Shown piece by piece: positions 2 through 16,615 of a stretch of 64,000 bases of DNA. Location of the stretch: contig MCFH01000002.1 of the NCBI GenBank assembly GCA_002104945.1, positions 310,001 through 374,000 of the forward strand, given 5' to 3'. The first letter of the stretch is position 1; each line of letters starts with the position of its first letter. Position numbers and translations under genes: made by a program. A model generated the notes under the pieces. The model made no database searches and had not been told where the DNA came from. It worked only from the letters and a program-made list of their open reading frames with translations. The stretch comes from Piromyces finnis finn. Lineage: Eukaryota; Fungi; Neocallimastigomycota.

Positions 2-3000
2 TTTTGTCAGAAGAAAATAGAAGAATATAACAATTCTCCAGAAGGTCAAAAAAGAAGAATAACTACAATTTTAACTCCTGAAACAATAAAGAAAATAAAA
101 CAAATTATTTTTGGTTTATTGGCAAATACCCCAATGATTATAAAAGGTTTTACTTCTGCTGGAAAAAGTTTCAATGCTATTGTAAGTTCTGTTATTCATG
201 GAGGTCAATCTCCTGTTTCAATAGTCCTTTCAGAAAATACAACAGTAGAAGATTTGTTAGGAAAATACATTTTACAAAGAAAAGAGTCATCAATGATGTC
301 TTTTGTTCCAGGTGTATTGTTAAAAGCTTATATTGAGGGAAAAATACTTATTTTAGATGAATGTGATTTAGCCAAGCCTGAAGTTTTATCTTGTATTTTA
401 GGATCTTTATCAAAAGACGAAATTACTGTAAATAATAGAATTTATAGAAAAACAAAAGGTTACAATGTTATATTAACTATGAATGGTGAAACAGAAGGGT
501 TCACTAGTACTCAAAGAAACGAACTCAATTTAAATATTTTATCAAAATTTGTTATCATAGAATTTGATAAAATGAGTAAAGAAGAATGTGAACTTATATT
601 TATGAAGCTTATGCCTAATGCTTATAAACAAAATGTTCCTAATTTTGTAAATTTACATAATAGGATGTTAGAATATTCACAAAAGACAATTGATCCTATT
701 GTTACCTTAAGAAATTTAAAAGCATGTATTTATTTATTGAAAGTTAATATACCAGTTAGAGCCTCGGCTGAAATTGCTTATTCAGGAAGATTTCCTATTG
801 ATGAAAGAAATGAATTTAATGATATTCTTGGTAACTTTGGAAGTGATGATATTGATAGTAATATTAAGAAAGAAATAATTAAAAGGTTTGATGAGTATAA
901 TTTATACTATAATGACTCCTATTTAAAATGTGCTTACTTAGCATTGTCGGCATGTAAAGCTGGTCTTCACCCTCTTTTAATTGGTAAAAATGGATCAGGA
1001 TTAACAGAATTAGCTAAATTTGTTGCTTGCAATTATTCTATTAGTACTGATACATTTTTAAGTGAATCTAAAAGGACTAATGTTGAAGTAGTATGTCTTG
1101 GTTCTGAAACATCAACAGATGATTTAGTGGGTTGTTTCCAGCCAATATTATGTAAAACTGAAGATTTAACCAAACTTATTTCATGGGTAGATGGTCCAAT
1201 TTTTAGAGCAGGAAAAAGTGGAAATCCTGTAATATTAGATGGAATAAATTGTGCTAAATCACAAGTTATAGAATATTTAAATCCATTGTTGGAAGATAAT
1301 TCAGTTTTTAATAATGTTAAATTTAATGTAAAAGAAAAGGGCGATGAAGAATATGTTAATATAGAAAAAGGCTTTATAATTATTGGTACTATGAAGGTAG
1401 AAGAAGGAATAGAAAAGATATCAAAAGCTTTGATGAATAGATTTGTAGCTATATATTTGGACGACTTTTCATTAAATGCTGAAGTAATTGAAAAAATAAC
1501 ATATTTAACAGTTAAAAAACTTGAAAATAAAAATAAAAAAAGTTTTGAAGTAGATGACACACTAACTAATAATTGTGATTATAATAAGATTGAAAATGAA
1601 AGTTTATTAGAAATGGAGGATGAAAGAATTGAAAGAGATGAGGAGGAGGATGAAATCACTTCAGAATCAGACTTTGATGAAGAAGAAGATGGTCAAGGTA
1701 TTGTATTTTCAGATTCAAATGAGGAAGAAAGTGAAAATGATAAAGAAGGTGAATTTAATAACTTATCACATTTTACTAACGAAAGAAATAATGCCAATAT
1801 TTCTTCGGAATATTCAAATGATAATTGTGAAACAAAGGAAGAAGACATTCCTAATTGGTATAATATGAACAATTTTAATAGTATAAATATAAAAGAAATA
1901 GTAGAACTACTTAAAAATGTTGAATTTAAAAATATTAAGACGTTAATTAAAACAATTACTAAATTATATTATATTATTCAAAGAACTAAAATGTCTGGTT
2001 CTGATTCTTATACTTTTTTAAAATTAACAGATGATATTTTTGATTTAAAAAATATAGATAAGTTAATATCAGATGTATTAAATGATAATGAAAAAGGCAG
2101 TAATATATTTTTCTTTAATAATAATAAAATAGGTAATGCAAAAAAAATGATATTATCATTAATTTTATCTGATCTTTCTTGTTCTCCAATATTTATACAA
2201 GGAACAGCAGGCACAGGAAAGTCTGTAGCAGTAAGACATTATGGCTCGTTTAGAAAATTCAGAAATAGAGATCCAATATTAACCATTAGTTGTAGTTCCG
2301 AAATGACTTTTGAACAATTTATTGGAACTTATAGTTTTAGAAATACATCTTTCCAATTTATTGAAGGACCATTATTAACGGCTATGAGGAATGGTGAACC
2401 TATTCTTGTTGATGAATTTAATTTATGTTCTGAAGAAGTACTTCTTAGCTTACTCCCATTATTGAAGGCTGAGATTAATGATAGTATCCAATTAAAAGGT
2501 GTTCCATATAAGGTTAAAATTAATCAAGGTTTTGTTTTTATAGCTACTGGAAATAATGATAATGAGTCTGGTAGGAAAAAATTACCTAATTCAATATTGG
2601 ATGAATTAATAAATGTAAAAATTTCAAATCCATCTTTAGAAGAATATAAAGGATTAATTGATGAAATAATAAATAATGAATATAAGGAGTGCAGTAGGTA
2701 TATATCTTCTGATAATATATGTGATATTGTTGAAGTAGTTGAATCAGTGGCACAACAGAGTTTCACATTAAGACATATCAAAATTTTATTAAATAGAATA
2801 AAAAGATTTTGTACTGAGGAATTAACATGCTTAGAAATTTCAAACGAAGAATATAGAAAAATACCAGTTGCCTATGTAATAATAAGTTTCATAATTCCAA
2901 GTTTAAAGGTAGGTAAAGAGAGAATAGAACAATTAGTTGAAAAGATCGGTATTATTACTAATATAGATAGTAAAGAATTATTAGAATTTATAAAATCTGA

Positions 3001-6000
3001 AGCTATAATAGTTTCTAGGCAAAGTAGATATTACTTGAAAAAGAATTATATTAAAAAAGGGAAAATAATATTAAGTACATCTTTAAAGAAAAACTATCCT
3101 CCAATTATTTTACAAACTTATTTTTGGATTCGTATGTCATGTTCATTAAATTTTGATAGTCCTTCCGAAGAAACTCTACTTTTAGTTGGTGAAACTTCAT
3201 ATAAATCATATATATTGGAACAATGGTTGGATTCTTTAGAAAGTGATTCTTATGAAGAACATTTTGTAACTGGAAATACTGAAACACAAGATTTAATAGG
3301 TATCTCAACTTTAGAAAATAAAGATAAATTGTCTAATTATATTGATTCTCTTGTAGAAAAAGCTATATTATATTTACATGGAGATAGAAAGAATATTAAT
3401 GGAGCAAGAGAAGAGAAACTTAGATCAATTATGAATGAACTTGAAATAGATGAAAAGGGTATTATCCATAATAATAAAAACAATGTTTGTTTAGAATTCA
3501 TTTATAGATGCATTAAAGAGTTAATTAACTTAGAAGAAAATTATGATAAATCAATGGGAATAAAAACAGTTACATCATTTAATTTAGGTATAATATCTTC
3601 TGCTTGTATCTTTGGAAAAAAATTAATTATAAAAGGAATAAATCAAATTTCATCATCAGTACTAGAAAGAATAAATTCTGTGTTAGAATACCCAAGAAGT
3701 CTTGTCCTGAATGAAGATACTCAAGGGATATTTAATAATCAAAAAATATTTAAAGATTTATACAAAAGCAATAGAAGAAGTATTCCAATCTCTAATAAAT
3801 TTACATTATGTTTTACTTCAAGAGAAATAATTAATGGAAAGTTATCTGAGGCATTTAAATCAAGATGTTCTACAATTATTTGTCCTAGTTATGATAATTC
3901 ACTTTATCTAGGCATTATACAAATAGATAAATATGAAAATTATAGTTTAATTGCAAAATCTATTATAACAAAAAATGAACTTCAGAAAGAAATAATTAAA
4001 TTATACAATAAAATAACAAACAATAAAATTATAATTCCCGTACTTTCATTTATAAGATGGTGTAATACTACTGAAAGAATTAGTGAATATTTGCAAGATA
4101 CAAGTTTTAAAGAAATAGTAGGAATAGCTGTACTCAGAAGCATATTTGATGGATTTGAACCAAACAATAGAACTAGAATTATTAGAGAATTATTACTAGA
4201 ATACCTACCTGAAAATTTATATAATTTAATAGTAAATGATGAAAATAATGATGATTATAAACCCCCATTTGAAATTGAAAATAAAGATGAGGATTTTAAA
4301 TATGTTAAGTCAATTTATAGTGGAATTAAATTACAAGTTACCAATCCAAAAATTGATAAATTAAATGAAATAAAATGGACTAAATCAGCATCAGATATGG
4401 CAGATTCAATTTTAACTTCACTAGTAGCTCATACAATGTTAATATTTGAAGGTCCTCCAGGAAGAGGTAAAACAGCAATAGCAACTATTATTTATGAATT
4501 TCTAGATATAGATTATAGAAGAATAAATTTATCACCTTCTACAACAGAAGAAGATATTTTTTCTAGAACGGTCCCAAAAATTACTAATGACAGTAATGAG
4601 AAAAATATTAAAACGGAAATACAATTAGGACCACTTTTACAAATAGTACAAAAAAGCTCAAACTCAATCAAATATTGTAAAAATGCTTTATTATTGGATG
4701 AAATTAACTTAGCATCTAATGAGTTATTAACTCAATTATATTCTTTTTTAATTTCAATATTTTATAAAAAAGAATATCATACTTCATATGGCAAAAACTA
4801 TAAAATAGGAAAAATTGGTGTTATAGCAACAATGAATGATGCAAAATTATCAAATGCAAGAACAGCACTTTCATCAAATATTTTAAATCTTAGTCATACC
4901 TTTAAATTATCAAACTATGAGCAAAAAGAAATGATGATTTTGGCTAACAATATATTAGGAAGAGAAAAGTTATTCAAAAAAAAAGAATTCATGATTAGAA
5001 CATTAAATTGTTTCTTAAATTCACAAAAATATATTAAAAACAATTTAGAGATAGGAGGATTTACTTTAAGAGAAATTTTAAAGATAGGTGAGTTTACTAA
5101 TAAATGTCCTGATGTACCACTTGATGCTTTGTTAGAAATAGTATTATGTTCAAATATGTCGGATGAAGATGCCTATAAATTTAAAGAAGAAAATCAATTT
5201 ACAAATACTCTTAGTAATATAACACCTGATATTAAAAATAATAAACTACGTTTTAAAGATTTGATAGAATATGATTTAATTAGATTTAGATGTGATGGAC
5301 CATTAAAAAGACAATTTACATCCCCCGAGAAGGATGCTTTAATGAAAATATTAATTGGACTTAAAGCAATGAGAACGATTTTATTGTCCGGAGATATTGG
5401 AACTGGAAAGACATATATTGTGGAAACGTTGGCTGAAATAATTGGGGTAAAGTTAAATATAATTCAATTTAATGCGGAAACATCATCATCAGATACTATA
5501 GGAAAAACTGAAATGAGTGTAGATTCAAATGAAGAATATGATATTAAAAAGGAATTAAATAAATTAAAAAAAATATTAATAAAGGAAAAATGGCCTAGGA
5601 TAACTTCTTTTATATGTATGGATTTTTATAATTCTAAAGATATAAAGAAATTTTTTGGAAAGTTATGTAAAGAAAATCCAATAAGTAATGAAGCTAAAGA
5701 TCAATTAGAAATTTATTGTTGTAAATTAGAAAAATATTCTACATTATCATTTACTAATTTTGAATTCAAAAAGTCATTGCTACTTAATGCTATGGAGAAA
5801 GGAGAGTGGATATTAATTGATGATCTTAATTATGCACCACAAGAAATTGAAAGATTAATGCCATTATTAGAAGAAAGCCCTTCATTAACGATTTTTGAAC
5901 AAAGCCCTCAAATTAAATATTCAAGAAACTATATTGAGGATACTGATACTATAAAGCATATACAAATACATAAGAATTTTAGACTTTTTTTAATTGCATC

Positions 6001-9000
6001 TAATGAAAATGCTTTATCTACAGCTATAAAATCAAGATGTTTATGTGTTAGGCTTAAGCCTTTTGAAAAACCACAGCATTACTCTGAACTTATATATAGC
6101 TGTTTAAGTAATTCTAACCTTCCTGAAAATGATATTATTTCAATTGCAACACATTTAGGTAGGGCATTTCATGATATTAAAAATAGTGAAAAGGAAATAT
6201 ATTTCTTACTTAAAAATTTGAAATTGACACCAGTCAACTTAGTTTATCTTTCAAAGGTTTTGTCTAATTATTCAGAAGTGAATGGGAAAACTTTATTTGA
6301 TGGTATAAAATTCTGTATCTTTTCAATGTTTAAGAATAAAAATGAGCAAATTAGCAGATTTAAAAAATCATTATCTAGTGAAATAGATTTTAATATTTCT
6401 ACTTATAATACCGGGATAATGAAAGATAAAAAGTATATTCTATGTAAGATTGAAATAAAAATATTAAGTTATGCTAAACTATTAAAAAATAAAGAAATAA
6501 GCAATAATGATATTGATAAAGAATTTAATGATAAATTGAATTCATTATTTAAAAAAAAATACAAAACTAAAAGAGTAGCAAACATAAAAATTAATAATGA
6601 AAAAGAAAATGAAATAATTGATTTTATAAAAAGAGCTAAAAATGACATAATTAATAATTTAGAACAATTTACATTAGAAGATATCGAAGAATATAAAGAA
6701 TATATTGAAGAAGTTTTATTTATATTAGAAAATTTTATTCCTGAAGAAAAAGAAATATATGATTATTTATACTATCTTAAATATTTAAATTTATTATTAA
6801 AAGAATTAACTTCAATTAAAAACAAGAAAGTTAAGGGATTAAAATTAAATACTATTGAAAATTCAAAAGATTACTTTTTACAATTTGGAGATTCTAAAGA
6901 GGAAGCAGAAGAAAATGCTTTGAAGGTGTATTGGTTTAGAAATGTATTAAATGGTTTTGATATCTTTATACCAGAAAAAGTTTCAACAAAAAATTTAAAT
7001 TTATCAATTATTAATATATATTATAATCATTATGCTGAAGAGTATAATACATTACCTTTGGATTATACATCCAAAATTAAGATAGAACCTTATATTTATT
7101 TAAAATTCCTAGAAAACATTAAATTACGAAAAATATTAAAATATTTTAATTTTACCATTAATGATGGTTATATAGAAGAAATATTTTATACTTTAGTTCA
7201 TTACAAAAAATCTATAGAAATTCATACTTCAGTTAATGAAATATTAGAAATTATAATGTTTATTGGAGAAAACTCTAAATTTATTATTGAATATAATAAT
7301 GGATACTGTATTAATAAATATAAAATAGAAGAGTTAAGAGACAACTTGAAATTGAATGAATTATATAGTAAATATAAATATAATGTAAAAGACATATATA
7401 AGAAAAATATGGATTATATAATTCCATTAAGCTTAAAAAAAAATAATAATTTAATAGGAGGAAATATCTATTGGTTTTATAATATTTTCGCTAAAGAATA
7501 TGATCTAAAGTCTGTTATTAACAATAATATGCTATGTGAATTTAATAAAGCAATTGAAAATATATTAAGATTAAAAACATATAATACAAAAAATATGGAA
7601 GGAATATGGAATAATGAATTAAAAGATATATTAAATAAGGGCTATCAATTAATCTATTCTTTACAAGGTTTGAAAAATATTCTTTTGGAAGAGGAAAATA
7701 AAGAAGAAAAAATAAAAGAATTCATCGAAAATATAATGACTTTAAAAAAATATAAGCTATTTCATATGTGTGAATCAAAAAATGTTATTATAGAAAATAT
7801 TATTAATTTAATAGATTTAATAAAAGATTTTTTTAAAAGATATGAAATTAATATATGGGATGAAATGGAATTATTTAAAAATACTTGTATTATATATTTA
7901 GAAAGTGAAAAATTGAAAGAAAAGTATGAAACAGAAAAAATAAAATACGTTAATCAATTAAACCAAATTTTATTAAAATTAAATAATATTTGTAATCAAG
8001 ATAATAAGAATAAATTTGATTCTATAGATAAGGAAATTAGAGGATTATTAAAATTTATAAATAATACGGATATAGAAGATATAGCCAATAAAATCAGAGA
8101 AATTGAAAAGCAATTAAGTATGTTTAAAATAGCTAATGATGATAATATTAATAAAATGTCTTCGAAAAAATCACAAATATTAAATGACACTAATGTTAAT
8201 AATAATAATAATGAAACTATTAAATCAGAAGTATTAGTGAAATATTCTAAATTATGTAACATTATTAATAGAATGAAAAAAACCAAGGAACAACAACTGC
8301 TTATAAATAATATGTTTATGTTTTGTGACATTTCTACTTTAGATAATTTTATTAATACATATAAAGTTTCGTTTATGAAATGCTTAGATGATAAATCTGT
8401 TTTAGAAGTTTTAATTAAAGAGTTAAAACATTTAGTGAATTCATTATTAATTTCGGATATAATTAATATATATAATGAATATTCTCAATATGAGGATTAC
8501 TTAACATTTATTAAAGAAATACTTTCAAATAATTTAAATTATATAAAAATACTAGGTAATTATTTTGAGGACGATGCTTATATATATTTACCAAAACTTG
8601 ATATTATTGATTTAAAATATTGTGTTCAATATGGTATTAAAAATAAAGAATACGGTTCATTAATTAAATCAATAACACATGATTTAAATATTAAAATTCG
8701 TAACCCAGAAGAAGGCGAAACAACTGAAGAATATTTAAAATATTTAATTTATCAATTTGATAAAGATATTGATTTTTCTCATAGTATAGAAGAAATAATT
8801 TTATCTCTTGATAAAAAACATATAGAAACGGTTAAAAATTTATATAATGCTGCTAAAATAGTAGAATTATTCAAAAGCATTAAATATGATTATAATAAAG
8901 AATGGCTTATGAAAGATGTTGATGAAATGAAAAACTCATACTGGAAAGAGCCAGGTAAAATTCTTGTTAAATATAAATATAGTTCTTTGCTCCATTTTAA

Positions 9001-12000
9001 TCAATTTAGTGATAAGAATATATTTGATGGGGAAAAAATTATTGCGAAATCTCTTTATGCAGCACATGAAGCATTAAATTTAAAAAATATTCAGTATAAA
9101 AAAGGTATCCTTAATGATATTCTTACTGAAGTTTTAAATAATATTTATAATGATACTATAAATAATTATAATTATGGATACAGAACTATCTTATTTTATA
9201 ACAATAACATATATAAAGATAATGTTGGTGAAACAATGGTCTCAATTATATATTCTGCATTTGAAATATTATTACAAATAGATGATATTGTAGAAAATTA
9301 TCATGTTAAGAATATTATAAAAGAAATTATTAATAAATTTATAGTTAATTGTATAAATTATGAATCACCGGATTTTGATAATATCGATATTACTAATATT
9401 TGTAATATATTAATAAATAATTCTTTGAGTAAATATAATTTAATGTATAAAAACAAAAAAGAAGAATATGAAGAAGAAATTATAACATATAGAGAAAAAT
9501 TTATAACTATTGTCGAAAAATTAAAAGAGAAATATGAAAATATTTATGAAACAGAGAAAAGCCAGTATTTAAAAAAATTAGAAGACTATAATAATAAAAT
9601 ATATAATTTAAGAGAAAAATATAAAAAGGAATTTACATTTGATAAGTTTATTACTAATATATATACAAAAAAAAATAAAAACTATAGCGACTGCGACCAA
9701 GATAATAAAGAAGCCAAGAAAAAATATACGGAATATATGAAAAAAAATACTGAAGATGAAGAAATTCTAAAATATTACAAAATAAATATAAGTAAACCAT
9801 TCGATGAAAATATTGATGAAAAAATAAAATCATTTAATAAAGAATGCAATTCATTACTATTACTAGAGATATACGATATAAATATTTTTGAATATAAAAC
9901 TATAATAAATAGTAATAAAATAACTAATTTTATAGAAGATGATAGAGATAAGCAATTATATTTAAAGTATGAAGATAATTTGAAAGAAAAAATAAATGAT
10001 TATATTAACATTATTAATGACAATAAAAATTTCATGAAAGAAATAAAGAATATAACAATACCCTCATATAGATGTTCAGAGTATAATATTGAAGCTGATG
10101 TTAAAACATTGATGGAATGGATTAAAAAGCTATTAAATTGTAAAATAAATATGAAAATTAATGAATATAAGGAAATTCCTCATAATAAAGAAACAAACAT
10201 TACAGAAACAATAAAAATGTATTCAACAGACACAAATTGGATAAATGATAGTAAAAATAGACCAAGTTTCTTACTTGATAATATTAATATAGATCTAGGT
10301 ATTTACATTTTAAAGCAAATTCATGTAAATAATGTTGGTTCTGTAATTTTTAACAATACCTGTTCATATCCAATTACTTTTGAATTAGAGCAAAGTGAAA
10401 AGAATGGAATCAAAGCATATACAAATGGAAATACAATACAACAAAATAAACCATTGAATATTAAATTTAGATTAAATAAAAATCCCGATACTAATGAGAC
10501 AATAAAATGTGAATTCTATATTAAATTAATTAAAAATAATGAAGAATGTGACAGATGTAAAGTAGTAGCTTATTTAAATGTAATTCCATTTTGTATAAAA
10601 TTTAAATTTAATGAGAAATACAATATAGATGAAAATAACAATTTAAGTATAAATCATTATATCAATGATTCATTAGAAATTATGTATAATTATCCAGGAA
10701 ACTATTCATCTAATAACTTAGGTATTATAATAAAACAAAATGAAGATAATTGTAATAATGATTTAACTATTGAACAACAACAAGGTATAATAAGATCGAC
10801 ATTTAAATCAAAATTACAACAACCTATTGTAAAATGTTCATATAATAAAAAAATTAACTTAAATAAATTACAATTGATCAATTTAAACCTTAATTTTCCA
10901 ATTCCAACATATTTTGGTCTTGTTGTATATGATGAAAAAGAAATAAATATGCAATCCATTGATGTTGAAAAAGATAATCCAATAACATTATACTTATTTA
11001 ATATGAGTGCCACTTCAATAAATATTAATTATCATTATAACAATAGAAATATCGAATTAATGGAAAAAACTGAAAATATAAATCCTGGTGAAAAGAAGAA
11101 ATTAATATTTAAAGTTTTAAAAGAAAGTTATTCTGAAAATCTTTATTTAGGTATTAATAACAAGAATATTGATATCAATGTTATTAGTTTACCTAAATTA
11201 ACAAAAGAAAAACATTTTATATTAAAATATAAATATATATGTTGTAATCTTATAACTAAAAGTATACAAAATAAACTTAAGTGTATTATAATTGATAATC
11301 AATATAAAATAATCCAAAAAGATAAAGTAGAAACCATAAAATATAAATACGATAGTCTTAGCTCTTGTTATCTACTATATAATAATAAAGTATGTGATAA
11401 AGTAATTAAAGAAGAAAGTAACTATAATTATAATAAAAATGTTAATTGTTCTGTTTATGGATTCAGTAATAACAATTTATGTACAAATAAAATTTATAAT
11501 GTAGATATTGTTCTAAAATATGAAAGTAAAAATAATCATGTATTTTCTACAAATCAAATGAAAGAATTTTCAAAAATATTAAAAGATGAAAAATTTAAAA
11601 ACGATCTTCAATCTAATGATAGAGAAAGAATAGAGGCCTCAATAAATAAATTAATAGATGCAGAATTGAGCCTCAACGAAAATATTAATGAAAATATTAA
11701 AAATATAAAAATTGATGAAAGTGAAAAAACATCCATTAAAAATATAATAGTATATCTTATGAAAATGTCGAATGATTATTTAATTGATAACTTTATTGAA
11801 CAATTAAAGAAATGGTTAAAAGAAATGTATAATAGAAGTATTTTACTTCCATATTTTAATGTAAATACTGAATTGAATGAGAATATCAAAGATTTTTTGA
11901 ATAAATTAAAGTATATTATTAGTTTTGTAGATATAGTTGTTAATCCTATGATATTGAGCGAAGATATTTTGGACTATATCAAAAGTAGTTCTAATAGTAA

Positions 12001-15000
12001 TATAAAATTAATTAGTAATTACAGAGAATTAACTAACATCTTTAATCGGTGCTTTAGATATGGTCTTGAAAAAGATAGTGAAACTTCAGAAATAATATTT
12101 TATGATGGTAAATATGTTAAAGGTGATGTCTTTGATGCGTTTGATAAGCAAATTAAAAATTCGAAAATGGATAATCAAAGTTATAATATTGATAAAATTA
12201 ATAATTTCATTAAAATATACAGGAAAGAAATCCAAGAAATTATAGATAAAATAATAAATAATAAGGTTAGTATATCAAATTTACTTAATATATTAGATGA
12301 ATGCATTGACATAATTGCCAAATGTCCATTAATATTATCAACAATAGATAATAATAAAGAACTATTCAATTACTGTATTTCAAATAGTCAAAGAATATAC
12401 GATTTTATATATAAATTAACGAAATCACCAATTAATGAAACACATTTTTCTAAAAGAATATGTAAAACTCTTTATGCCATCCATAATATATTATCACAAT
12501 ATGAATTTTTTGATTTATTTACTACTATATCAAGTCATTTTGATTCTTCTTATATAAAAACATATGGTGCCATAGTTCAATGTGAATTACCTTTTGATAA
12601 CACTTACGAAAATGATATTACAGCTAGTAAAAAAATGAATAAAAAATGTAATTCATACGAAATAAATAGTAAAAGAAGAAATGCCCATTTTAGTAAGTCA
12701 CAATTTGCTTCAAGAGAATATGAAAATTATAAAAATGAATCTTTTAATAATACAAATAATGTCGAAAAACCTATATTTGTTAAAGAGAATAAAGTTGATC
12801 ATAAAAATAAATTTACCAGAGTACTATCAGATGAGGAAATAAATAAACTATCAGTTCCATACTTTAATCAAAACATTGAAGAGAATAAGGAAAAAGATAG
12901 TAATGATGACAATATATTAGAAAATAACATTTCAGATATTTTACAAAATCAATGTAAAGATATAAAAATATCAATGGATATATTGGAAGCAAACTTTGGT
13001 AAAATAACACCAGAAAAATTTTTAGAAATGATATTAGAAAGAACAGCATGTCTTAATCAATCATTATCTGAAATTAGATATTCAATGGTAAAAAGAGATG
13101 GTTTAAATAAAGATGGTTCATTTAATTATTATGATGAATGTTCAGAAGCATCATCCTACATTCAATCGATCATTTCTAATAGTTTAAAATCTGAACTAGA
13201 ATTTATAGATAATAATAATATACTATTACCTTATAGTGTAGTGGATAGTTATGTTGACATAGCAGTAGACATTACTCATATGTCACCAATTCAAAGAATT
13301 GCTAGTCTTGTAATTTCAACAGGGTTATCCATTTCTTTGAGCAGCTACGGGATCAAAATAAGAATTTCTGTTTTTGGAGAAAGAAATGGTGTTTGGATTT
13401 TTTCTAATGATTTTGAAACAAGTATTGAAATCCAATTATCAAGATTAAGAGATGCTCTTTCAAGTAAAAAAAGATACATGTCTATCCCGGGAGATGCCTT
13501 ACTTTCATTGAAGAAGGATTGGATTGAAAAAGAATATGAAAATAAAAAAACAAAATATACATCAGTATTAATATCCTCATTAATTTCACCTCAAGTTGTA
13601 AATAAAGTGGTTAAATGGGATGAAATCATTTCAAATAATATAGTTGTATTTGGACTAAAATCTGATTTTAGTGAGGAATTTATGAAGAGACATAAAGTAT
13701 ACGAACAATTATTACAAGTTCCATCAAAAAATAATGAAAATATAACTCAACAATTTTTAGACCCAATGAACGTGATAAATCAGAATGAATCAGAAAGTGA
13801 ATTACTTGAAATATTATGTAAATCATTAGTAAGATCTTGTAGATACAAATTAGAAGAGGACAAAGATAACTTTAAAGAAACCAAAATTATTGTAAATAAC
13901 AATCATAATGATTTGAATGAAGAAATATCATTAAAATATCTAATTGAATCTATTCTTAATAACAGGAACGATGTAACATTCTTTGCTCAAAATAAAGAAC
14001 ATACCACTACTGAAGTGTATAATTTGAATAATAGTTTTGTACAAACAAAGACACAACTTCCTTCAATATATGAAGAAACCCAAAATAGTATATTATGTGA
14101 TAACGGCAGCATAGGAGTTCTTAAAGATGCTGCGGAAAAGTTATTAAAGACTTCATTTGGATTAGCCTTTCCACCAAATGCTTCTTCGAAAAAAGTCCCA
14201 ACCGCATCAGGAGGTACAATATCTATACCAGCTCTTAAAAAATGGATTGCTTCAGGATTCACGTATAAAGAGATATTTTTGAAAAAAGCTGGAAAAACAA
14301 AAAGAAAATATAAAATTACTGTAGCCATTGATTTCTCATCATCTATCCATTTATCATGTAATTATTCTCATGCTATTTCAACCACCTTATTATTATTAAT
14401 AGCCCCATCAATTCTTCAAGATAATGAAGAAATTAGTATAGATGTTATTATAAGCACTATTGATGGACCAAAAATCATGTATATATCTTCCAAGGCAAAT
14501 ACTTTTGAATCTATTTCTTATATTCAATCCATTATTAATATTATTGATAAAGAAGCTCCTAAATTCTGTACACCAGGTAATACCTTAAATGCTGCTTATC
14601 AATTACAATTAGAAAAAAGCGGTATAAACATGGGAAGAAATATATTCTTTATTACTGATGGTTATGTCACCTCCAGAAAAGAGGTTATGTTTGCTAATTC
14701 GATTATCAGTAGTTGTGAAAATTCTGGTATTGAATTAATGACATTTGGTGTCGGTTCATATCCTTATGGAATCAAGCAATTGTATCCAAAATGTTGTTAT
14801 GCACCATCCATACTAAATCTTGCTGATGCTCTTTCCTATTTATTTTCTTTATCAAGAAATCCAGCATGTGATAAAATTATACCTCAAGTCATTATTAGTT
14901 CTATATCTGAAGAGCTTCAAACGAAGCTTTCCGAAATGATTAACCAACCACCGGATAATACAGAATTACAAGAAAGTATAGAAAATACATTAATGGATTA

Positions 15001-16615
15001 TATTGAATGGATAGGAAATAACAATACCATGAAACTTGAAAATATAAATAATATGAAAATATACAGTAGAAATCCTGAAATTGAGCCATACTTTGATGGA
15101 ATGTTTAAGGGATTTAAAATTTTGGTGGTCATCTTGTATTTGGGAGGATATGAATATAACGGAAAAATCAGGGATCAAAATATCACCATACAACAATTTT
15201 ACTCTGGTACTGGTATGGCATTAAAAAGAAAAGGCTTTGAATACAAATTAGTTTTTAGTTATGGTGATGCTATTAATGAACTTACTAAATCTGAAGAAAA
15301 TCGATGTCCATACATAGAAACATGGGTATTCTGTAGTAGTGGGGATGGATCTTTGCCCGACATCGCTATTGATAAAGACAACAATAAGATTATTCCATTT
15401 TTCGAATGTATTACTTCATTTAATAATAATGGCGGTGGATTATTATTGTTTTGTGATAATGAACCCTATACTTTAGAAGCCAATATATTACTTTCTGAAT
15501 ATTTGAAATTTGAAAATGAATATGGTCATAATGTAAAACCACAATTTTCCATGAAAGGAAATTACAATCAACCTGACTTTGAAAAAAAAAATATTACATC
15601 ATTAGAACCTAACGATACAAGAAAAAATGGCAGATTTAAATCAGATGTTATGCTTCCATCACCTGGAAAATGTAAGGATAGAATGTCCCTAAGAACTGGA
15701 TTAATAAAGTTTAATGAAGGAATTACATTATCCTATGCTGAATTTACAGGTGACTCAAAGACCTATTCACCATTTACCCCATTTGCCTATTTATCCGATG
15801 AATCCAATGAACGACCATTTATTTTGTATTATGATCCGAAGATGAAAAATCCTACCATAAATCAAGGTCCAATAGTGATACATGGTGGTTTTACCTCAGC
15901 ATTTTATGACTTTACGTTTGACGGTACTGGTAGACTTGTAATTTCAATTGCATGTTGGTTAGTGAGGTATGAAGAAAGATTTCATCAACAAATGCAAGAA
16001 GAGATGAGGATAGATATGGTTAAAAATATACCTTCAATAGACATTCCAGAAAATAAAAATGAAAATTTCACAAGATGGGTTAATAGCAATAGAAATCTCT
16101 ATTCTATTATTATTTTAGATGTTTCAGGATCTATGGAAGGTTTCTATTCACCACTTATTAATATGTCCAATTCCATTATTAAAAGACAAATGGAAAATCC
16201 AGAAAATAAAGGAACTATTATTTTCTTTGCTACAACAGCCAAAGCAGTACTTACAGAAGAATATAGAGAATTAACAATTGGTGATATACATAAAGCTAGA
16301 GTTGGTAAATGGACTAATTCCTATTTAGCTTTTTCAGAAGCCAAAAAATATATTAATCCTACTAATCAATATGATGATAAAAGATTATTATTCCTAACCG
16401 ATGGAAAGTGTGATTGTAGTAGTCTCAAACCATTATGTGATGATATAGCAAATGCAGGATTTTCAATACATATTCTTGGATTTGGAGAAGAAAAAACTTT
16501 CATTAATTTAAAACCGTTTGTAAGAGATAACAATAGAAACAAAGGAACATTCCAAGTTTATAATAATTTTATTGAAGTTGCCGATTCAGCTAAAAAGACA
16601 TTTGCAGCTGAATAA
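2..16615 (+). CDS. Giant midasin/Rea1-like AAA+ ATPase with six AAA modules and three vWA modules; 5'-partial, more than 5530 aa, intronless in this window
   Basis: The ORF track starts at a TTG at 119, but the frame is open back to base 2 (FCQKKIEEYNNSPEGQKRRITTILTPETIKKIKQIIFGLLANTPMIIKGFTSAGKS), so the true start lies outside the window. Walker A-type motifs: GFTSAGKS (~146), GKNGSGLT (~983), GTAGTGKS (~2201), GETSYKS (~3188), GPPGRGKT (~4451), GDIGTGKT (~5390). Each is followed by a midasin-style Walker B segment (ILILDECD, VILDGIN, ILVDEFN, LIIKGIN, LLLDEIN, WILIDDLN). A midasin-type MIDAS lead-in is present (KKWIASGFTYKEIFLKKAGKTKRKYKITVAIDFSSS ... FITDG), as is a terminal vWA (IILDVSGSM ... 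FLTDG). Symbol withheld because the architecture departs from canonical MDN1. Confidence 0.9.
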   Translation, partial: FCQKKIEEYNNSPEGQKRRITTILTPETIKKIKQIIFGLLANTPMIIKGFTSAGKSFNAIVSSVIHGGQSPVSIVLSENTTVEDLLGKYILQRKESSMMSFVPGVLLKAYIEGKILILDECDLAKPEVLSCILGSLSKDEITVNNRIYRKTKGYNVILTMNGETEGFTSTQRNELNLNILSKFVIIEFDKMSKEECELIFMKLMPNAYKQNVPNFVNLHNRMLEYSQKTIDPIVTLRNLKACIYLLKVNIPVRASAEIAYSGRFPIDERNEFNDILGNFGSDDIDSNIKKEIIKRFDEYNLYYNDSYLKCAYLALSACKAGLHPLLIGKNGSGLTELAKFVACNYSISTDTFLSESKRTNVEVVCLGSETSTDDLVGCFQPILCKTEDLTKLISWVDGPIFRAGKSGNPVILDGINCAKSQVIEYLNPLLEDNSVFNNVKFNVKEKGDEEYVNIEKGFIIIGTMKVEEGIEKISKALMNRFVAIYLDDFSLNAEVIEKITYLTVKKLENKNKKSFEVDDTLTNNCDYNKIENESLLEMEDERIERDEEEDEITSESDFDEEEDGQGIVFSDSNEEESENDKEGEFNNLSHFTNERNNANISSEYSNDNCETKEEDIPNWYNMNNFNSINIKEIVELLKNVEFKNIKTLIKTITKLYYIIQRTKMSGSDSYTFLKLTDDIFDLKNIDKLISDVLNDNEKGSNIFFFNNNKIGNAKKMILSLILSDLSCSPIFIQGTAGTGKSVAVRHYGSFRKFRNRDPILTISCSSEMTFEQFIGTYSFRNTSFQFIEGPLLTAMRNGEPILVDEFNLCSEEVLLSLLPLLKAEINDSIQLKGVPYKVKINQGFVFIATGNNDNESGRKKLPNSILDELINVKISNPSLEEYKGLIDEIINNEYKECSRYISSDNICDIVEVVESVAQQSFTLRHIKILLNRIKRFCTEELTCLEISNEEYRKIPVAYVIISFIIPSLKVGKERIEQLVEKIGIITNIDSKELLEFIKSEAIIVSRQSRYYLKKNYIKKGKIILSTSLKKNYPPIILQTYFWIRMSCSLNFDSPSEETLLLVGETSYKSYILEQWLDSLESDSYEEHFVTGNTETQDLIGISTLENKDKLSNYIDSLVEKAILYLHGDRKNINGAREEKLRSIMNELEIDEKGIIHNNKNNVCLEFIYRCIKELINLEENYDKSMGIKTVTSFNLGIISSACIFGKKLIIKGINQISSSVLERINSVLEYPRSLVLNEDTQGIFNNQKIFKDLYKSNRRSIPISNKFTLCFTSREIINGKLSEAFKSRCSTIICPSYDNSLYLGIIQIDKYENYSLIAKSIITKNELQKEIIKLYNKITNNKIIIPVLSFIRWCNTTERISEYLQDTSFKEIVGIAVLRSIFDGFEPNNRTRIIRELLLEYLPENLYNLIVNDENNDDYKPPFEIENKDEDFKYVKSIYSGIKLQVTNPKIDKLNEIKWTKSASDMADSILTSLVAHTMLIFEGPPGRGKTAIATIIYEFLDIDYRRINLSPSTTEEDIFSRTVPKITNDSNEKNIKTEIQLGPLLQIVQKSSNSIKYCKNALLLDEINLASNELLTQLYSFLISIFYKKEYHTSYGKNYKIGKIGVIATMNDAKLSNARTALSSNILNLSHTFKLSNYEQKEMMILANNILGREKLFKKKEFMIRTLNCFLNSQKYIKNNLEIGGFTLREILKIGEFTNKCPDVPLDALLEIVLCSNMSDEDAYKFKEENQFTNTLSNITPDIKNNKLRFKDLIEYDLIRFRCDGPLKRQFTSPEKDALMKILIGLKAMRTILLSGDIGTGKTYIVETLAEIIGVKLNIIQFNAETSSSDTIGKTEMSVDSNEEYDIKKELNKLKKILIKEKWPRITSFICMDFYNSKDIKKFFGKLCKENPISNEAKDQLEIYCCKLEKYSTLSFTNFEFKKSLLLNAMEKGEWILIDDLNYAPQEIERLMPLLEESPSLTIFEQSPQIKYSRNYIEDTDTIKHIQIHKNFRLFLIASNENALSTAIKSRCLCVRLKPFEKPQHYSELIYSCLSNSNLPENDIISIATHLGRAFHDIKNSEKEIYFLLKNLKLTPVNLVYLSKVLSNYSEVNGKTLFDGIKFCIFSMFKNKNEQISRFKKSLSSEIDFNISTYNTGIMKDKKYILCKIEIKILSYAKLLKNKEISNNDIDKEFNDKLNSLFKKKYKTKRVANIKINNEKENEIIDFIKRAKNDIINNLEQFTLEDIEEYKEYIEEVLFILENFIPEEKEIYDYLYYLKYLNLLLKELTSIKNKKVKGLKLNTIENSKDYFLQFGDSKEEAEENALKVYWFRNVLNGFDIFIPEKVSTKNLNLSIINIYYNHYAEEYNTLPLDYTSKIKIEPYIYLKFLENIKLRKILKYFNFTINDGYIEEIFYTLVHYKKSIEIHTSVNEILEIIMFIGENSKFIIEYNNGYCINKYKIEELRDNLKLNELYSKYKYNVKDIYKKNMDYIIPLSLKKNNNLIGGNIYWFYNIFAKEYDLKSVINNNMLCEFNKAIENILRLKTYNTKNMEGIWNNELKDILNKGYQLIYSLQGLKNILLEEENKEEKIKEFIENIMTLKKYKLFHMCESKNVIIENIINLIDLIKDFFKRYEINIWDEMELFKNTCIIYLESEKLKEKYETEKIKYVNQLNQILLKLNNICNQDNKNKFDSIDKEIRGLLKFINNTDIEDIANKIREIEKQLSMFKIANDDNINKMSSKKSQILNDTNVNNNNNETIKSEVLVKYSKLCNIINRMKKTKEQQLLINNMFMFCDISTLDNFINTYKVSFMKCLDDKSVLEVLIKELKHLVNSLLISDIINIYNEYSQYEDYLTFIKEILSNNLNYIKILGNYFEDDAYIYLPKLDIIDLKYCVQYGIKNKEYGSLIKSITHDLNIKIRNPEEGETTEEYLKYLIYQFDKDIDFSHSIEEIILSLDKKHIETVKNLYNAAKIVELFKSIKYDYNKEWLMKDVDEMKNSYWKEPGKILVKYKYSSLLHFNQFSDKNIFDGEKIIAKSLYAAHEALNLKNIQYKKGILNDILTEVLNNIYNDTINNYNYGYRTILFYNNNIYKDNVGETMVSIIYSAFEILLQIDDIVENYHVKNIIKEIINKFIVNCINYESPDFDNIDITNICNILINNSLSKYNLMYKNKKEEYEEEIITYREKFITIVEKLKEKYENIYETEKSQYLKKLEDYNNKIYNLREKYKKEFTFDKFITNIYTKKNKNYSDCDQDNKEAKKKYTEYMKKNTEDEEILKYYKINISKPFDENIDEKIKSFNKECNSLLLLEIYDINIFEYKTIINSNKITNFIEDDRDKQLYLKYEDNLKEKINDYINIINDNKNFMKEIKNITIPSYRCSEYNIEADVKTLMEWIKKLLNCKINMKINEYKEIPHNKETNITETIKMYSTDTNWINDSKNRPSFLLDNINIDLGIYILKQIHVNNVGSVIFNNTCSYPITFELEQSEKNGIKAYTNGNTIQQNKPLNIKFRLNKNPDTNETIKCEFYIKLIKNNEECDRCKVVAYLNVIPFCIKFKFNEKYNIDENNNLSINHYINDSLEIMYNYPGNYSSNNLGIIIKQNEDNCNNDLTIEQQQGIIRSTFKSKLQQPIVKCSYNKKINLNKLQLINLNLNFPIPTYFGLVVYDEKEINMQSIDVEKDNPITLYLFNMSATSININYHYNNRNIELMEKTENINPGEKKKLIFKVLKESYSENLYLGINNKNIDINVISLPKLTKEKHFILKYKYICCNLITKSIQNKLKCIIIDNQYKIIQKDKVETIKYKYDSLSSCYLLYNNKVCDKVIKEESNYNYNKNVNCSVYGFSNNNLCTNKIYNVDIVLKYESKNNHVFSTNQMKEFSKILKDEKFKNDLQSNDRERIEASINKLIDAELSLNENINENIKNIKIDESEKTSIKNIIVYLMKMSNDYLIDNFIEQLKKWLKEMYNRSILLPYFNVNTELNENIKDFLNKLKYIISFVDIVVNPMILSEDILDYIKSSSNSNIKLISNYRELTNIFNRCFRYGLEKDSETSEIIFYDGKYVKGDVFDAFDKQIKNSKMDNQSYNIDKINNFIKIYRKEIQEIIDKIINNKVSISNLLNILDECIDIIAKCPLILSTIDNNKELFNYCISNSQRIYDFIYKLTKSPINETHFSKRICKTLYAIHNILSQYEFFDLFTTISSHFDSSYIKTYGAIVQCELPFDNTYENDITASKKMNKKCNSYEINSKRRNAHFSKSQFASREYENYKNESFNNTNNVEKPIFVKENKVDHKNKFTRVLSDEEINKLSVPYFNQNIEENKEKDSNDDNILENNISDILQNQCKDIKISMDILEANFGKITPEKFLEMILERTACLNQSLSEIRYSMVKRDGLNKDGSFNYYDECSEASSYIQSIISNSLKSELEFIDNNNILLPYSVVDSYVDIAVDITHMSPIQRIASLVISTGLSISLSSYGIKIRISVFGERNGVWIFSNDFETSIEIQLSRLRDALSSKKRYMSIPGDALLSLKKDWIEKEYENKKTKYTSVLISSLISPQVVNKVVKWDEIISNNIVVFGLKSDFSEEFMKRHKVYEQLLQVPSKNNENITQQFLDPMNVINQNESESELLEILCKSLVRSCRYKLEEDKDNFKETKIIVNNNHNDLNEEISLKYLIESILNNRNDVTFFAQNKEHTTTEVYNLNNSFVQTKTQLPSIYEETQNSILCDNGSIGVLKDAAEKLLKTSFGLAFPPNASSKKVPTASGGTISIPALKKWIASGFTYKEIFLKKAGKTKRKYKITVAIDFSSSIHLSCNYSHAISTTLLLLIAPSILQDNEEISIDVIISTIDGPKIMYISSKANTFESISYIQSIINIIDKEAPKFCTPGNTLNAAYQLQLEKSGINMGRNIFFITDGYVTSRKEVMFANSIISSCENSGIELMTFGVGSYPYGIKQLYPKCCYAPSILNLADALSYLFSLSRNPACDKIIPQVIISSISEELQTKLSEMINQPPDNTELQESIENTLMDYIEWIGNNNTMKLENINNMKIYSRNPEIEPYFDGMFKGFKILVVILYLGGYEYNGKIRDQNITIQQFYSGTGMALKRKGFEYKLVFSYGDAINELTKSEENRCPYIETWVFCSSGDGSLPDIAIDKDNNKIIPFFECITSFNNNGGGLLLFCDNEPYTLEANILLSEYLKFENEYGHNVKPQFSMKGNYNQPDFEKKNITSLEPNDTRKNGRFKSDVMLPSPGKCKDRMSLRTGLIKFNEGITLSYAEFTGDSKTYSPFTPFAYLSDESNERPFILYYDPKMKNPTINQGPIVIHGGFTSAFYDFTFDGTGRLVISIACWLVRYEERFHQQMQEEMRIDMVKNIPSIDIPENKNENFTRWVNSNRNLYSIIILDVSGSMEGFYSPLINMSNSIIKRQMENPENKGTIIFFATTAKAVLTEEYRELTIGDIHKARVGKWTNSYLAFSEAKKYINPTNQYDDKRLLFLTDGKCDCSSLKPLCDDIANAGFSIHILGFGEEKTFINLKPFVRDNNRNKGTFQVYNNFIEVADSAKKTFAAE

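What the first reader, a model, noticed from the sequence alone, without database searches (positions are those of the whole stretch)
2..16615. Remodelled midasin-like giant: AAA x6 - long linker - vWA(degenerate) - MIDAS vWA - GATase-like - vWA
Seen in the sequence: six tandem AAA+ modules, a ~2,400-aa linker, then three vWA-type modules with an extra alpha/beta domain between the last two. Established: canonical Rea1/MDN1 is AAA x6 - linker - long D/E-rich region - one terminal MIDAS, and serves in 60S ribosome maturation. This protein keeps the recognisable Rea1 MIDAS lead-in but has no long acidic region and continues ~600 aa past that MIDAS. Inference: it is a non-ribosomal midasin paralog, a mechanochemical remodeller with several ligand-binding heads. 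It could be a defence or substrate-extraction machine analogous in logic to other giant eukaryotic AAA proteins. This is the strongest candidate for an undescribed system in the window.
Basis: partly seen in the sequence, partly recalled or inferred. Interest (0 to 1): 0.88.

Follow-up and report, generated by a model that had tools for sequence, protein, structure and literature searches.

The report
Undescribed midasin-like giant of gut anaerobes
This gut fungus encodes a 6,082-residue ATP-driven machine that resembles the ribosome-assembly factor midasin but belongs to a separate, undescribed family found so far almost only in oxygen-avoiding eukaryotes, most of them gut dwellers (gut fungi, rumen ciliates, trichomonads, oxymonads, Giardia relatives), whose gene tree points to transfer between unrelated eukaryotes.

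Summary
Window 2-16615 (+) is one uninterrupted ORF of 5,537 codons, the 3' nine-tenths of a 6,082-aa protein (P0001).

Its parts are:
- six AAA_5 modules
- a 2,284-aa linker
- a degenerate vWA
- a Rea1-type MIDAS vWA with its lead-in
- a GATase1-fold domain, best matching the GIFT domains of IFT52 and OST48
- a terminal vWA with an intact MIDAS motif
- a catalytically dead kinase-like head, upstream of the window

It is not canonical MDN1. It has 0 of 11 MDN1 signature motifs, no MDN1 lid domains, no D/E-rich region and no detectable MDN1-type linker. AAA2 and AAA4 are degenerate.

It belongs to a monophyletic sister family of midasin with no functional name in any source. I found members in Neocallimastigomycota, rumen ciliates (contigs capped by CCCCAAT telomeres), Parabasalia, Fornicata and an oxymonad.

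Gut-fungal and rumen-ciliate copies are sister clades (37-47% identity), nested among metamonad sequences. This survives Dayhoff-6 recoding, and a vertical-looking topology is rejected (AU p 5e-61). Eukaryote-to-eukaryote transfer is the likelier history.

A probable canonical gut-fungal MDN1 exists separately, but this is inferred from tree position only.

The function is untested. The best guess is a Rea1-like ATP-driven extractor with two metal-dependent grips. The scan had already noted the kinase-like head and a similar tail on another piece of this genome.

The parts
2..16615 (+). Single uninterrupted ORF. It is the C-terminal 5,537 of 6,082 residues of the giant protein P0001. The stop codon is at 16613-16615.
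   Evidence: a 5,046-nt contig of run X1 covers 11444-16489 without gap or mismatch
59..901 (+). AAA1 (window aa ~20-300). Walker A is GFTSAGKS and Walker B is ILILDE, both intact.
899..1501 (+). AAA2 (aa ~300-500), degenerate. Walker A is GKNGSGL and Walker B is ILDG. It is degenerate in every family member.
1514..2071 (+). Low-complexity insert between AAA2 and AAA3 (aa ~505-690), partly acidic. It is the only local D/E peak.
2099..3001 (+). AAA3 (aa ~700-1000). Walker A is GTAGTGKS and Walker B is ILVDEF, both intact. This is the best AAA_5 stretch.
3089..3991 (+). AAA4 (aa ~1030-1330), degenerate. Walker A is GETSYKS and Walker B is LIIKGI. It is degenerate in every family member.
4349..5221 (+). 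AAA5 (aa ~1450-1740). Walker A is GPPGRGKT and Walker B is LLLDEI, both intact.
5279..6241 (+). AAA6 (aa ~1760-2080). Walker A is GDIGTGKT and Walker B is ILIDDL (DD instead of DE).
6347..13198 (+). Linker (aa 2116-4399, 2,284 aa). It is conserved within the family. It has no Pfam family and no profile match to the MDN1 linker.
13226..13843 (+). vWA-like domain 1 (aa 4409-4614). It has the vWA strand/helix order and no DxSxS metal motif.
14132..14851 (+). Rea1-type MIDAS lead-in plus vWA2 (aa 4711-4950). The DFSSS motif is at aa 4777-4781 (nt 14330-14344).
15059..16036 (+). GIFT/ThuA-like GATase1-fold domain (aa 5020-5345). It is the most conserved part of the tail. No Cys-His-Glu triad is conserved across the family.
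16082..16612 (+). Terminal vWA3 (aa 5361-5537) with a complete MIDAS motif. DVSGS is at aa 5373-5377 (nt 16118-16132), and the conserved Thr and Asp are present.

Best explanation
What it is. The ORF encodes a real, single-chain member of an undescribed family of midasin-like giants. The family layout is:
- a kinase-fold head with no catalytic Asp
- a six-module AAA+ ring in which AAA1, 3 and 5 (and probably 6) can bind and hydrolyse ATP, while AAA2 and AAA4 are permanently degenerate
- a family-specific linker of about 2,300 aa
- a four-domain tail: a metal-less vWA, a Rea1-type MIDAS vWA, a non-catalytic GIFT/ThuA-like domain and a terminal vWA with a full MIDAS site

Shown. The architecture, its conservation from end to end, its separation from canonical MDN1, and its distribution in gut fungi, rumen ciliates and metamonads are all shown here.

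Inferred mechanism. By analogy with Rea1, ATP turnover in the ring would move the linker. The tail's two metal sites would each clamp an acidic residue of a protein ligand. The GIFT domain would add a third contact. The machine would then pull a bound factor out of a large assembly. The kinase-like head would act as a docking or regulatory module. The cellular substrate is unknown.

Inferred history. The gene reached the ancestor of Neocallimastigomycota, or passed between it and rumen ciliates, by eukaryote-to-eukaryote transfer within the gut habitat. It was not derived from the fungus's own MDN1.
For: Real gene:
- The ORF is uninterrupted.
- A contig of run X1 spans linker to tail without a break.
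- Full-length orthologs at 64-71% identity exist in Piromyces finnis, Piromyces sp. E2 and Neocallimastix lanati (two copies), all on large contigs. A shorter Neocallimastix californiae gene model (P0026, 3,622 aa) covers the ring only.

Separate family:
- The best solved match is midasin, at only E 4e-36.
- Canonical MDN1s hit at E 1e-43 or weaker, 21-25% identity, and all carry the lid domains PF17865, PF17867 and PF21108, which this protein lacks.
- 0 of 11 MDN1 signature motifs are present, against 10-11 of 11 in canonical sequences. There is no D/E-rich region.
- The linker profiles are unrelated.
- The family is monophyletic against MDN1 with 100 support.
- Degeneracy of AAA2 and AAA4 is shared by every member.

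Midasin-like grip:
- hhalign to the MIDAS profile with its lead-in gives E 3.5e-5.
- The Rea1-MIDAS/Rsa4 structure is the best structural match to tail residues 234-551, Z 18.5.
- The DxSxS...T...D residues are invariant or nearly so in vWA3, and DxS plus the beta-4 Asp are invariant in vWA2, with the third Ser nearly so.

Distribution:
- Only 309 representatives out of 1.84 billion match the tail.
- The named ones are Tritrichomonas, Histomonas, Kipferlia, Chilomastix, Dysnectes, Streblomastix and Barroeca.
- Four relatives' contigs carry (CCCCAAT)n repeats: L003 and L004 at both ends, and they are gene-sized; L005 at its 3' end and L002 at its 5' end. That repeat is the rumen-ciliate telomere.

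Transfer:
- Fungi and ciliates A form a clade with 100 support, nested with the oxymonad and Chilomastix sequences.
- The same result holds after Dayhoff-6 recoding, 99.5/100.
- Metamonad monophyly is rejected, AU p 5e-61.

Separate canonical MDN1 in gut fungi.
Against: - No experiment bears on function.
- The pulling mechanism is analogy only. The linker has no detectable similarity to the Rea1 linker, so force transmission could differ.
- Fungal and ciliate clades are reciprocally monophyletic. The direction of transfer is therefore unresolved, and an ancient paralog with many losses is not excluded.
- The trees are quick searches with SH-aLRT support. They have long branches and uneven amino-acid composition.
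- The AU group was named after the tree had been seen.
- The three canonical MDN1 sequences are assigned to gut fungi by tree position and composition only, with no DNA or name.
- Run X1 is only guessed to be RNA.
Confidence: 0.6

Rival explanations
1. It is the gut fungus's only, highly diverged MDN1 ortholog and still strips assembly factors from pre-60S ribosomes.
For: - Midasin is the best solved match.
- The MIDAS lead-in is kept.
- No named gut-fungal MDN1 was retrieved.
- The metagenome DNA scan found none.
Against: - It has 0/11 MDN1 motifs, no lid domains, no D/E region and an unrelated linker.
- It groups with ciliate and metamonad proteins, not with fungal MDN1.
- P0332, P0334 and P0337 are canonical MDN1s placed exactly where Neocallimastigomycota should sit.
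Confidence: 0.04
2. The family is an ancient eukaryotic paralog of midasin, inherited vertically and lost from nearly all aerobic lineages. No lateral transfer is involved. The mechanism is as in the best explanation.
For: - The family is deep sister to MDN1.
- It is present in three metamonad lineages, ciliates, fungi and perhaps a choanoflagellate.
- Fungal and ciliate clades are reciprocally monophyletic.
Against: - It needs many independent losses, including in all other fungi and in free-living ciliates with annotated genomes. None of these appeared among the 30 relatives whose names were looked up. Most of the 150 listed relatives were never named, and the other 159 of the 309 matches were not listed at all.
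- Fungi group with rumen ciliates inside metamonad sequences, and parabasalids nest among other ciliate copies.
- A metamonad clade is rejected.
Confidence: 0.2
3. It is an immune-like conflict machine, a eukaryotic counterpart of the MoxR-vWA NTPase systems. It senses or dismantles invader proteins, which would explain its patchy, transfer-prone spread and the several ciliate lineages.
For: - The distribution is patchy and non-vertical.
- Rumen ciliates hold several divergent copies.
- MoxR-vWA coupling is used in prokaryotic conflict systems (PMC7159879).
- The kinase head gives a weak hit to the PD-T4-6 defence kinase model.
Against: - PADLOC gave only generic kinase and AAA hits and nothing for the linker or tail.
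- The tail is conserved end to end rather than hypervariable: 47% mean column identity, with many invariant residues.
- The ciliate diversity may simply reflect different ciliate species.
Confidence: 0.15
4. The giant ORF is an assembly or annotation artefact that fuses separate genes.
For: Some relatives are annotated as fragments, for example N. californiae at 3,622 aa and split ciliate gene calls.
Against: - The same end-to-end layout recurs in four fungal assemblies and on two telomere-to-telomere ciliate chromosomes of 18.9 and 20.7 kb that hold nothing else.
- An independent contig of run X1 crosses the linker-tail junction.
Confidence: 0.02

Closest known systems
Midasin / Rea1 / MDN1 (pre-60S remodelling AAA+ ATPase)
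   Same: - Six AAA_5 modules lie in one chain, followed by a long linker and a MIDAS-type vWA domain.
- The basic lead-in before the DxSxS motif is kept, and the fold of that domain matches the Rea1 MIDAS.
   Different: - None of the MDN1 signature motifs or lid domains is present.
- AAA2 and AAA4 are dead.
- The linker is unrelated at profile level.
- There is no D/E-rich region.
- There is an extra N-terminal kinase-like head.
- There is an extra degenerate vWA before the MIDAS, and a GIFT-like domain plus a second MIDAS vWA after it.
- It forms a separate clade.
Prokaryotic MoxR/NorQ/CbbQ AAA+ with vWA partner (e.g. NorQ-NorD, RavA-ViaA)
   Same: The AAA_5/MoxR-type modules couple to MIDAS-bearing vWA domains. 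NorQ and CbbQ are the next-best solved matches. NorQD appears among the fold matches of the tail.
   Different: Those are single-module proteins that assemble into hexamers and have a separate vWA subunit. Here six modules and three vWA domains are fused in cis behind a kinase-like head.
GIFT domain of IFT52 and OST48/Wbp1; ThuA-like/DUF4350 GATase1-fold proteins
   Same: These are the best structural matches of the domain between vWA2 and vWA3, at Z 14.6-16.4.
   Different: Sequence identity is only 9-15%. No catalytic Cys-His-Glu triad is conserved across the family. The context, inside an AAA+ giant, is unprecedented among these matches.
VWA8 (animal AAA_5 + C-terminal vWA protein); from memory, not tested here
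   Same: It has dynein-related AAA modules followed by a vWA domain in one chain.
   Different: VWA8 is about 1,900 aa. It has no kinase head, no long linker and no GIFT domain. It did not appear in any search here.

Membership tests
Canonical midasin (MDN1/Rea1) | Six tandem dynein-related AAA modules in one polypeptide | tested here: met
   AAA_5 scores E 5e-74 and six Walker sites or remnants are present. Midasin is the top solved match.
Canonical midasin (MDN1/Rea1) | MDN1 signature motifs (EALNRLLDDNRE, ELSPALRNRFTEIW, RINNHEHTD and others) and the lid domains PF17865, PF17867 and PF21108 | tested here: not met
   0 of 11 motifs in P0001 and its relatives, against 10-11 of 11 in canonical sequences. 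The lid Pfams are absent from the family's precomputed lists and present in all canonical hits.
Canonical midasin (MDN1/Rea1) | Intact nucleotide sites in AAA2-AAA5 | tested here: not met
   AAA2 (GKNGSGL / ILDG) and AAA4 (GETSYKS / LIIKGI) are degenerate in every family member.
Canonical midasin (MDN1/Rea1) | MDN1-type linker | tested here: not met
   hhalign of the family linker profile against the canonical linker profile gives probability 0.07% and E 0.7. Structural similarity was not tested.
Canonical midasin (MDN1/Rea1) | Long D/E-rich region before the MIDAS | tested here: not met
   The maximum D+E over 200 aa is 0.26. Canonical sequences reach 0.46-0.50 over 500-750 aa.
Canonical midasin (MDN1/Rea1) | MIDAS vWA domain with the conserved lead-in | tested here: met
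   hhalign E 3.5e-5 over tail residues 312-519. Structure 6qta_A matches at Z 18.5 with 213 residues aligned. The domain is not C-terminal here.
Canonical midasin (MDN1/Rea1) | Orthology: branches inside the MDN1 clade with other fungi | tested here: not met
   It lies outside a 100-supported MDN1 clade and groups with ciliate and metamonad proteins.
Canonical midasin (MDN1/Rea1) | Binds the UBL domains of Rsa4/Ytm1 and acts on pre-60S particles | not testable with these tools
   This needs biochemistry.
Kinase-headed midasin-like giants (family proposed here) | Collinear tail of vWA(deg) - MIDAS - GIFT-like - vWA, and AAA2/AAA4 degenerate | tested here: met
   The tail is collinear over 1,138 aa in fungi and ciliates. 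MIDAS, GIFT and vWA3 are shared with parabasalids and Fornicata. Walker table.
Protein kinases (active) | HRD catalytic Asp and DFG Asp | tested here: not met
   The Pkinase hit is below threshold, E 7.8e-5. HRD is HKS even in Tritrichomonas and LPT in the fungus. DFG is replaced by SEI/TEI.
vWA domains with a MIDAS site | DxSxS ... T ... D metal-binding residues | tested here: met
   vWA3 is complete: D974, S978 and G1069 are invariant, and S976, T1039 and D1068 are nearly so. In vWA2, DxS plus D487 are invariant and S382 is nearly so. vWA1 lacks the motif.
Class I glutamine amidotransferases (catalytic) | Fold plus the Cys-His-Glu triad | tested here: not met
   The fold is shared, at Z about 12, but the non-catalytic GIFT and ThuA groups match better at Z 14.6-16.4. 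Only G59, E220 and G270 are invariant across 57 sequences.
Known anti-phage/defence systems (PADLOC) | Match to a defence-system protein model | tested here: inconclusive
   Only generic kinase (PD-T4-6) and AAA (mad8, IetA, TRIP13) hits appeared. The linker and tail gave none. The library is prokaryotic.

The most novel reading that the evidence does not exclude
This is a third class of in-cis hexa-AAA+ mechanoenzyme beside dynein and midasin. It is an 18-kb gene that has moved between unrelated anaerobic eukaryotes (metamonads, rumen ciliates, gut fungi). It serves a process specific to that way of life, or an innate-immunity-like conflict role. It uses two MIDAS grips and a GIFT domain under the control of a pseudokinase head.
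Probability: 0.3. Interest if true: 0.85.

Novelty: new variant of a known kind. Interest (0 to 1): 0.68.

Why it matters
Dynein and midasin are the only well-known proteins that carry a whole AAA+ ring in one chain. A third, conserved family with its own head, linker and multi-grip tail widens that class. It also offers a natural comparison for how ring motion is turned into pulling.

The family is confined largely to anaerobic eukaryotes, most of them gut dwellers, from three supergroups, and its gene tree conflicts with the species tree. That makes it a candidate for one of the largest genes known to have passed between eukaryotes. It is also a marker for a shared, still unknown cell-biological need of these organisms.

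It is directly testable in culturable trichomonads and gut fungi.

Tried and rejected
- I scanned JGI metagenomes with a DNA pattern for an AT-codon version of the MDN1 motif PALRNRFTEIW. It gave 19 loci. The four most AT-rich (L012, L013, L022, L028) have no ORF of 200 aa or more in the standard code and look like ciliates with a reassigned code. L025 (GC 0.31) is a yeast-like canonical MDN1. No gut-fungal MDN1 was recovered.
- Logan-derived AT-leaning MDN1s proved to be yeasts, or a 56% GC organism.
- The findings search by sequence was blank, and the protein-atlas search gave no taxon.
- Pfam and NCBIfam on single tail domains and on linker pieces gave nothing above noise, apart from a sub-threshold VWA_2 match on vWA3.
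- PADLOC gave only generic hits.
- phmmer of the ring against canonical MDN1 showed modules cross-matching. Only AAA1 and AAA5-6 align in register, so I make no module-by-module orthology claim.
- A first recoded-tree run failed on a model name and was repeated.
- I rejected the idea that the fungus-ciliate grouping is an AT-composition artefact, because it survives Dayhoff-6 recoding.
- I rejected contamination. The fungal copies sit on megabase contigs among ordinary eukaryotic genes, and the ciliate copies sit on telomere-capped chromosomes.
Full report
**The observation**

Window 2..16615 on the + strand is one open frame of 5,537 codons that runs off the 5' edge. It is identical to residues 546-6082 of a 6,082-aa database protein, P0001, which sits on a 1.96-Mb contig. 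The genome is about 20% G+C. Earlier notes of this scan identify it as an anaerobic gut fungus. The rest of the window holds ordinary eukaryotic genes: an APC1 fragment, an F-box protein and a C2H2 zinc-finger protein. A 5,046-nt contig from public run X1 covers 11444-16489 with no gap or mismatch, so the linker-tail junction is not an assembly seam. That run is only guessed to be RNA.

**Anatomy: the ring**

Pfam finds AAA_5 at E 5e-74 in the first 2,100 residues, nothing in the next 2,200, and weak vWA hits near the end. Six nucleotide-site positions can be read:
- AAA1, AAA3 and AAA5 have canonical Walker A and B motifs.
- AAA6 has Walker A and a DD Walker B.
- AAA2 and AAA4 are degenerate.

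An alignment of 16 relatives shows the same pattern in every member, including Kipferlia and Tritrichomonas. This is a family hallmark, not decay in one copy.

**Anatomy: the head**

Upstream of the window, P0001 starts with a kinase-like domain. The Pkinase hit is E 7.8e-5, below threshold. Tritrichomonas relatives score 1e-22 to 1e-30 on the same domain. Even so, their HRD motif reads HKS, and the fungal version has lost both catalytic aspartates. The head is best called a pseudokinase.

**Anatomy: the tail**

The last 1,138 residues align end to end in 24 relatives. AlphaFold2 on that alignment gives pLDDT 76 and four alpha/beta domains.
- The terminal domain matches solved vWA domains at Z 18-19.8. 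It has invariant or near-invariant DxSxS, Thr and Asp residues.
- The middle vWA, together with the stretch before it, matches the Rea1-MIDAS/Rsa4 crystal structure best, at Z 18.5 with 213 residues aligned. It aligns to a profile of canonical MIDAS domains, including the basic lead-in, at E 3.5e-5.
- The first vWA-like domain has the vWA strand order but no metal motif. I did not get a fold match for it alone.
- The domain between vWA2 and vWA3 was modelled separately at pLDDT 93.5. It has a GATase1-type fold. Its nearest solved structures are the GIFT domain of IFT52 (Z 16.4), OST48/Wbp1 (Z 16) and ThuA-like proteins (Z 14.6). True amidotransferases come lower, near Z 12. AlphaFold DB clusters give DUF4350 and ThuA-like names.
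- Across 57 sequences only one Gly, one Glu and one Gly are invariant in that domain, so a Cys-His-Glu triad is not conserved.

**It is not canonical midasin**

- The best solved match is midasin, but at E 4e-36 only.
- In a database of 5.8 billion proteins, canonical midasins appear at E 1e-43 or weaker and 21-25% identity. All of them carry the lid domains PF17865, PF17867 and PF21108, which this protein lacks.
- Eleven motifs found in most of 84 canonical MDN1s are absent from all 33 family members examined.
- There is no D/E-rich region.
- Profile-profile comparison of the linkers finds nothing.
- On ring trees rooted with six canonical MDN1s, the family forms a 100-supported clade outside them.

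**A separate canonical MDN1 in gut fungi?**

No named one was retrieved. A search seeded with Allomyces MDN1 returned three metagenome proteins, P0332, P0334 and P0337:
- They have the strongest AT-type amino-acid bias of the 120 listed.
- They are 94% identical to each other in the ring.
- They form a clade sister to Chytridiomycetes, which is where Neocallimastigomycota belong.
- They have 10 of 11 MDN1 motifs, a 750-aa acidic region and one terminal MIDAS.

I take them as the probable canonical MDN1 of gut fungi.

**Who else has the family**

- Full-length orthologs at 64-71% identity occur in Piromyces finnis, Piromyces sp. E2 and Neocallimastix lanati (two copies). A shorter Neocallimastix californiae gene model (3,622 aa) covers the ring only. 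No source gives any of them a functional name: they are labelled hypothetical or by a single domain.
- The next relatives, at 37-47% identity over ring and tail, come only from metagenomes.
- Four of their contigs carry (CCCCAAT)n. L003 and L004 carry it at both ends and are gene-sized (18.9 and 20.7 kb); L005 carries it at its 3' end and L002 at its 5' end. That repeat is the telomere of rumen ciliates (10.1101/2022.01.05.474053).
- An exhaustive search of 1.84 billion representatives with the tail finds only 309 matches.
- The named ones are Tritrichomonas musculus, Histomonas meleagridis, Kipferlia bialata, Chilomastix cuspidata, Dysnectes brevis, Streblomastix strix and, on a very long branch, the choanoflagellate Barroeca monosierra.
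- A second, more distant set of ciliate copies groups with the parabasalids.

**History**

On ring and tail trees the fungal clade and the main ciliate clade are each monophyletic and are sisters, with 100 support. In the tail tree this pair sits inside a 100-supported clade with Chilomastix and the oxymonad group. Dayhoff-6 recoding keeps both groupings, at 99.5/100 and 100/100. Shared AT bias is therefore not the cause. Forcing the named metamonads into one clade costs 212 log-likelihood units, AU p 5e-61. That group was defined after I had seen the tree.

The simplest reading is lateral spread among anaerobic, largely gut-dwelling eukaryotes, with the fungal and ciliate copies sharing one transfer. 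The direction is unresolved, and an ancient paralog with many losses remains possible.

**Function**

Nothing here tests function. By analogy with Rea1, the ring would drive the linker, and the two MIDAS sites would hold acidic residues of a ligand that is pulled from a complex. The GIFT-like domain and the pseudokinase head would add contacts or control. PADLOC gives only generic hits, so a defence role is neither supported nor excluded. I found no paper describing this family.

**Verdict**

The origin story changes. This is not a local remodelling of MDN1. It is a member of an undescribed family shared with rumen ciliates and metamonads.

Noticed in passing
window 10259-11221 (window aa ~3420-3740): A beta-strand-rich, conserved segment lies inside the otherwise helical-looking linker. 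Its motifs include NLGIYIL, VIPFCIKFKF and LYLFNMSA, which suggest one or two beta-sandwich domains. Pfam gives nothing significant.
   Followed up: partly
L002 (ciliate contig ERZ1667817 scaffold_4394), 147-12584 and 12754-16584: In a distant ciliate relative, the ring-plus-linker part and the vWA tail are called as two adjacent genes on one telomere-capped chromosome. This is either a real split or a missed tiny intron.
   Followed up: no
L012, L013, L022, L028 (JGI metagenome contigs): These are AT-rich canonical MDN1 genes with no ORF of 200 aa or more in the standard code. Identity is slightly higher under the ciliate code, so they are probably from ciliates that reassign TAA/TAG.
   Followed up: partly
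P0271/P0262 (Barroeca monosierra, 4,088 aa): A choanoflagellate protein shares only the GIFT-like domain and the last vWA. It has no AAA ring in its first 2,000 residues and sits on a very long branch. It may be a different architecture that reuses the tail module.
   Followed up: partly
window 1514-2071 (window aa 505-690): An acidic, Asn-rich low-complexity insert lies between AAA2 and AAA3. It breaks BLAST alignments to several orthologs, so it is variable between genera.
   Followed up: no
tree: P0004 and P0006: Neocallimastix lanati has two copies that fall in different fungal subclades. A duplication therefore predates part of the gut-fungal radiation.
   Followed up: no
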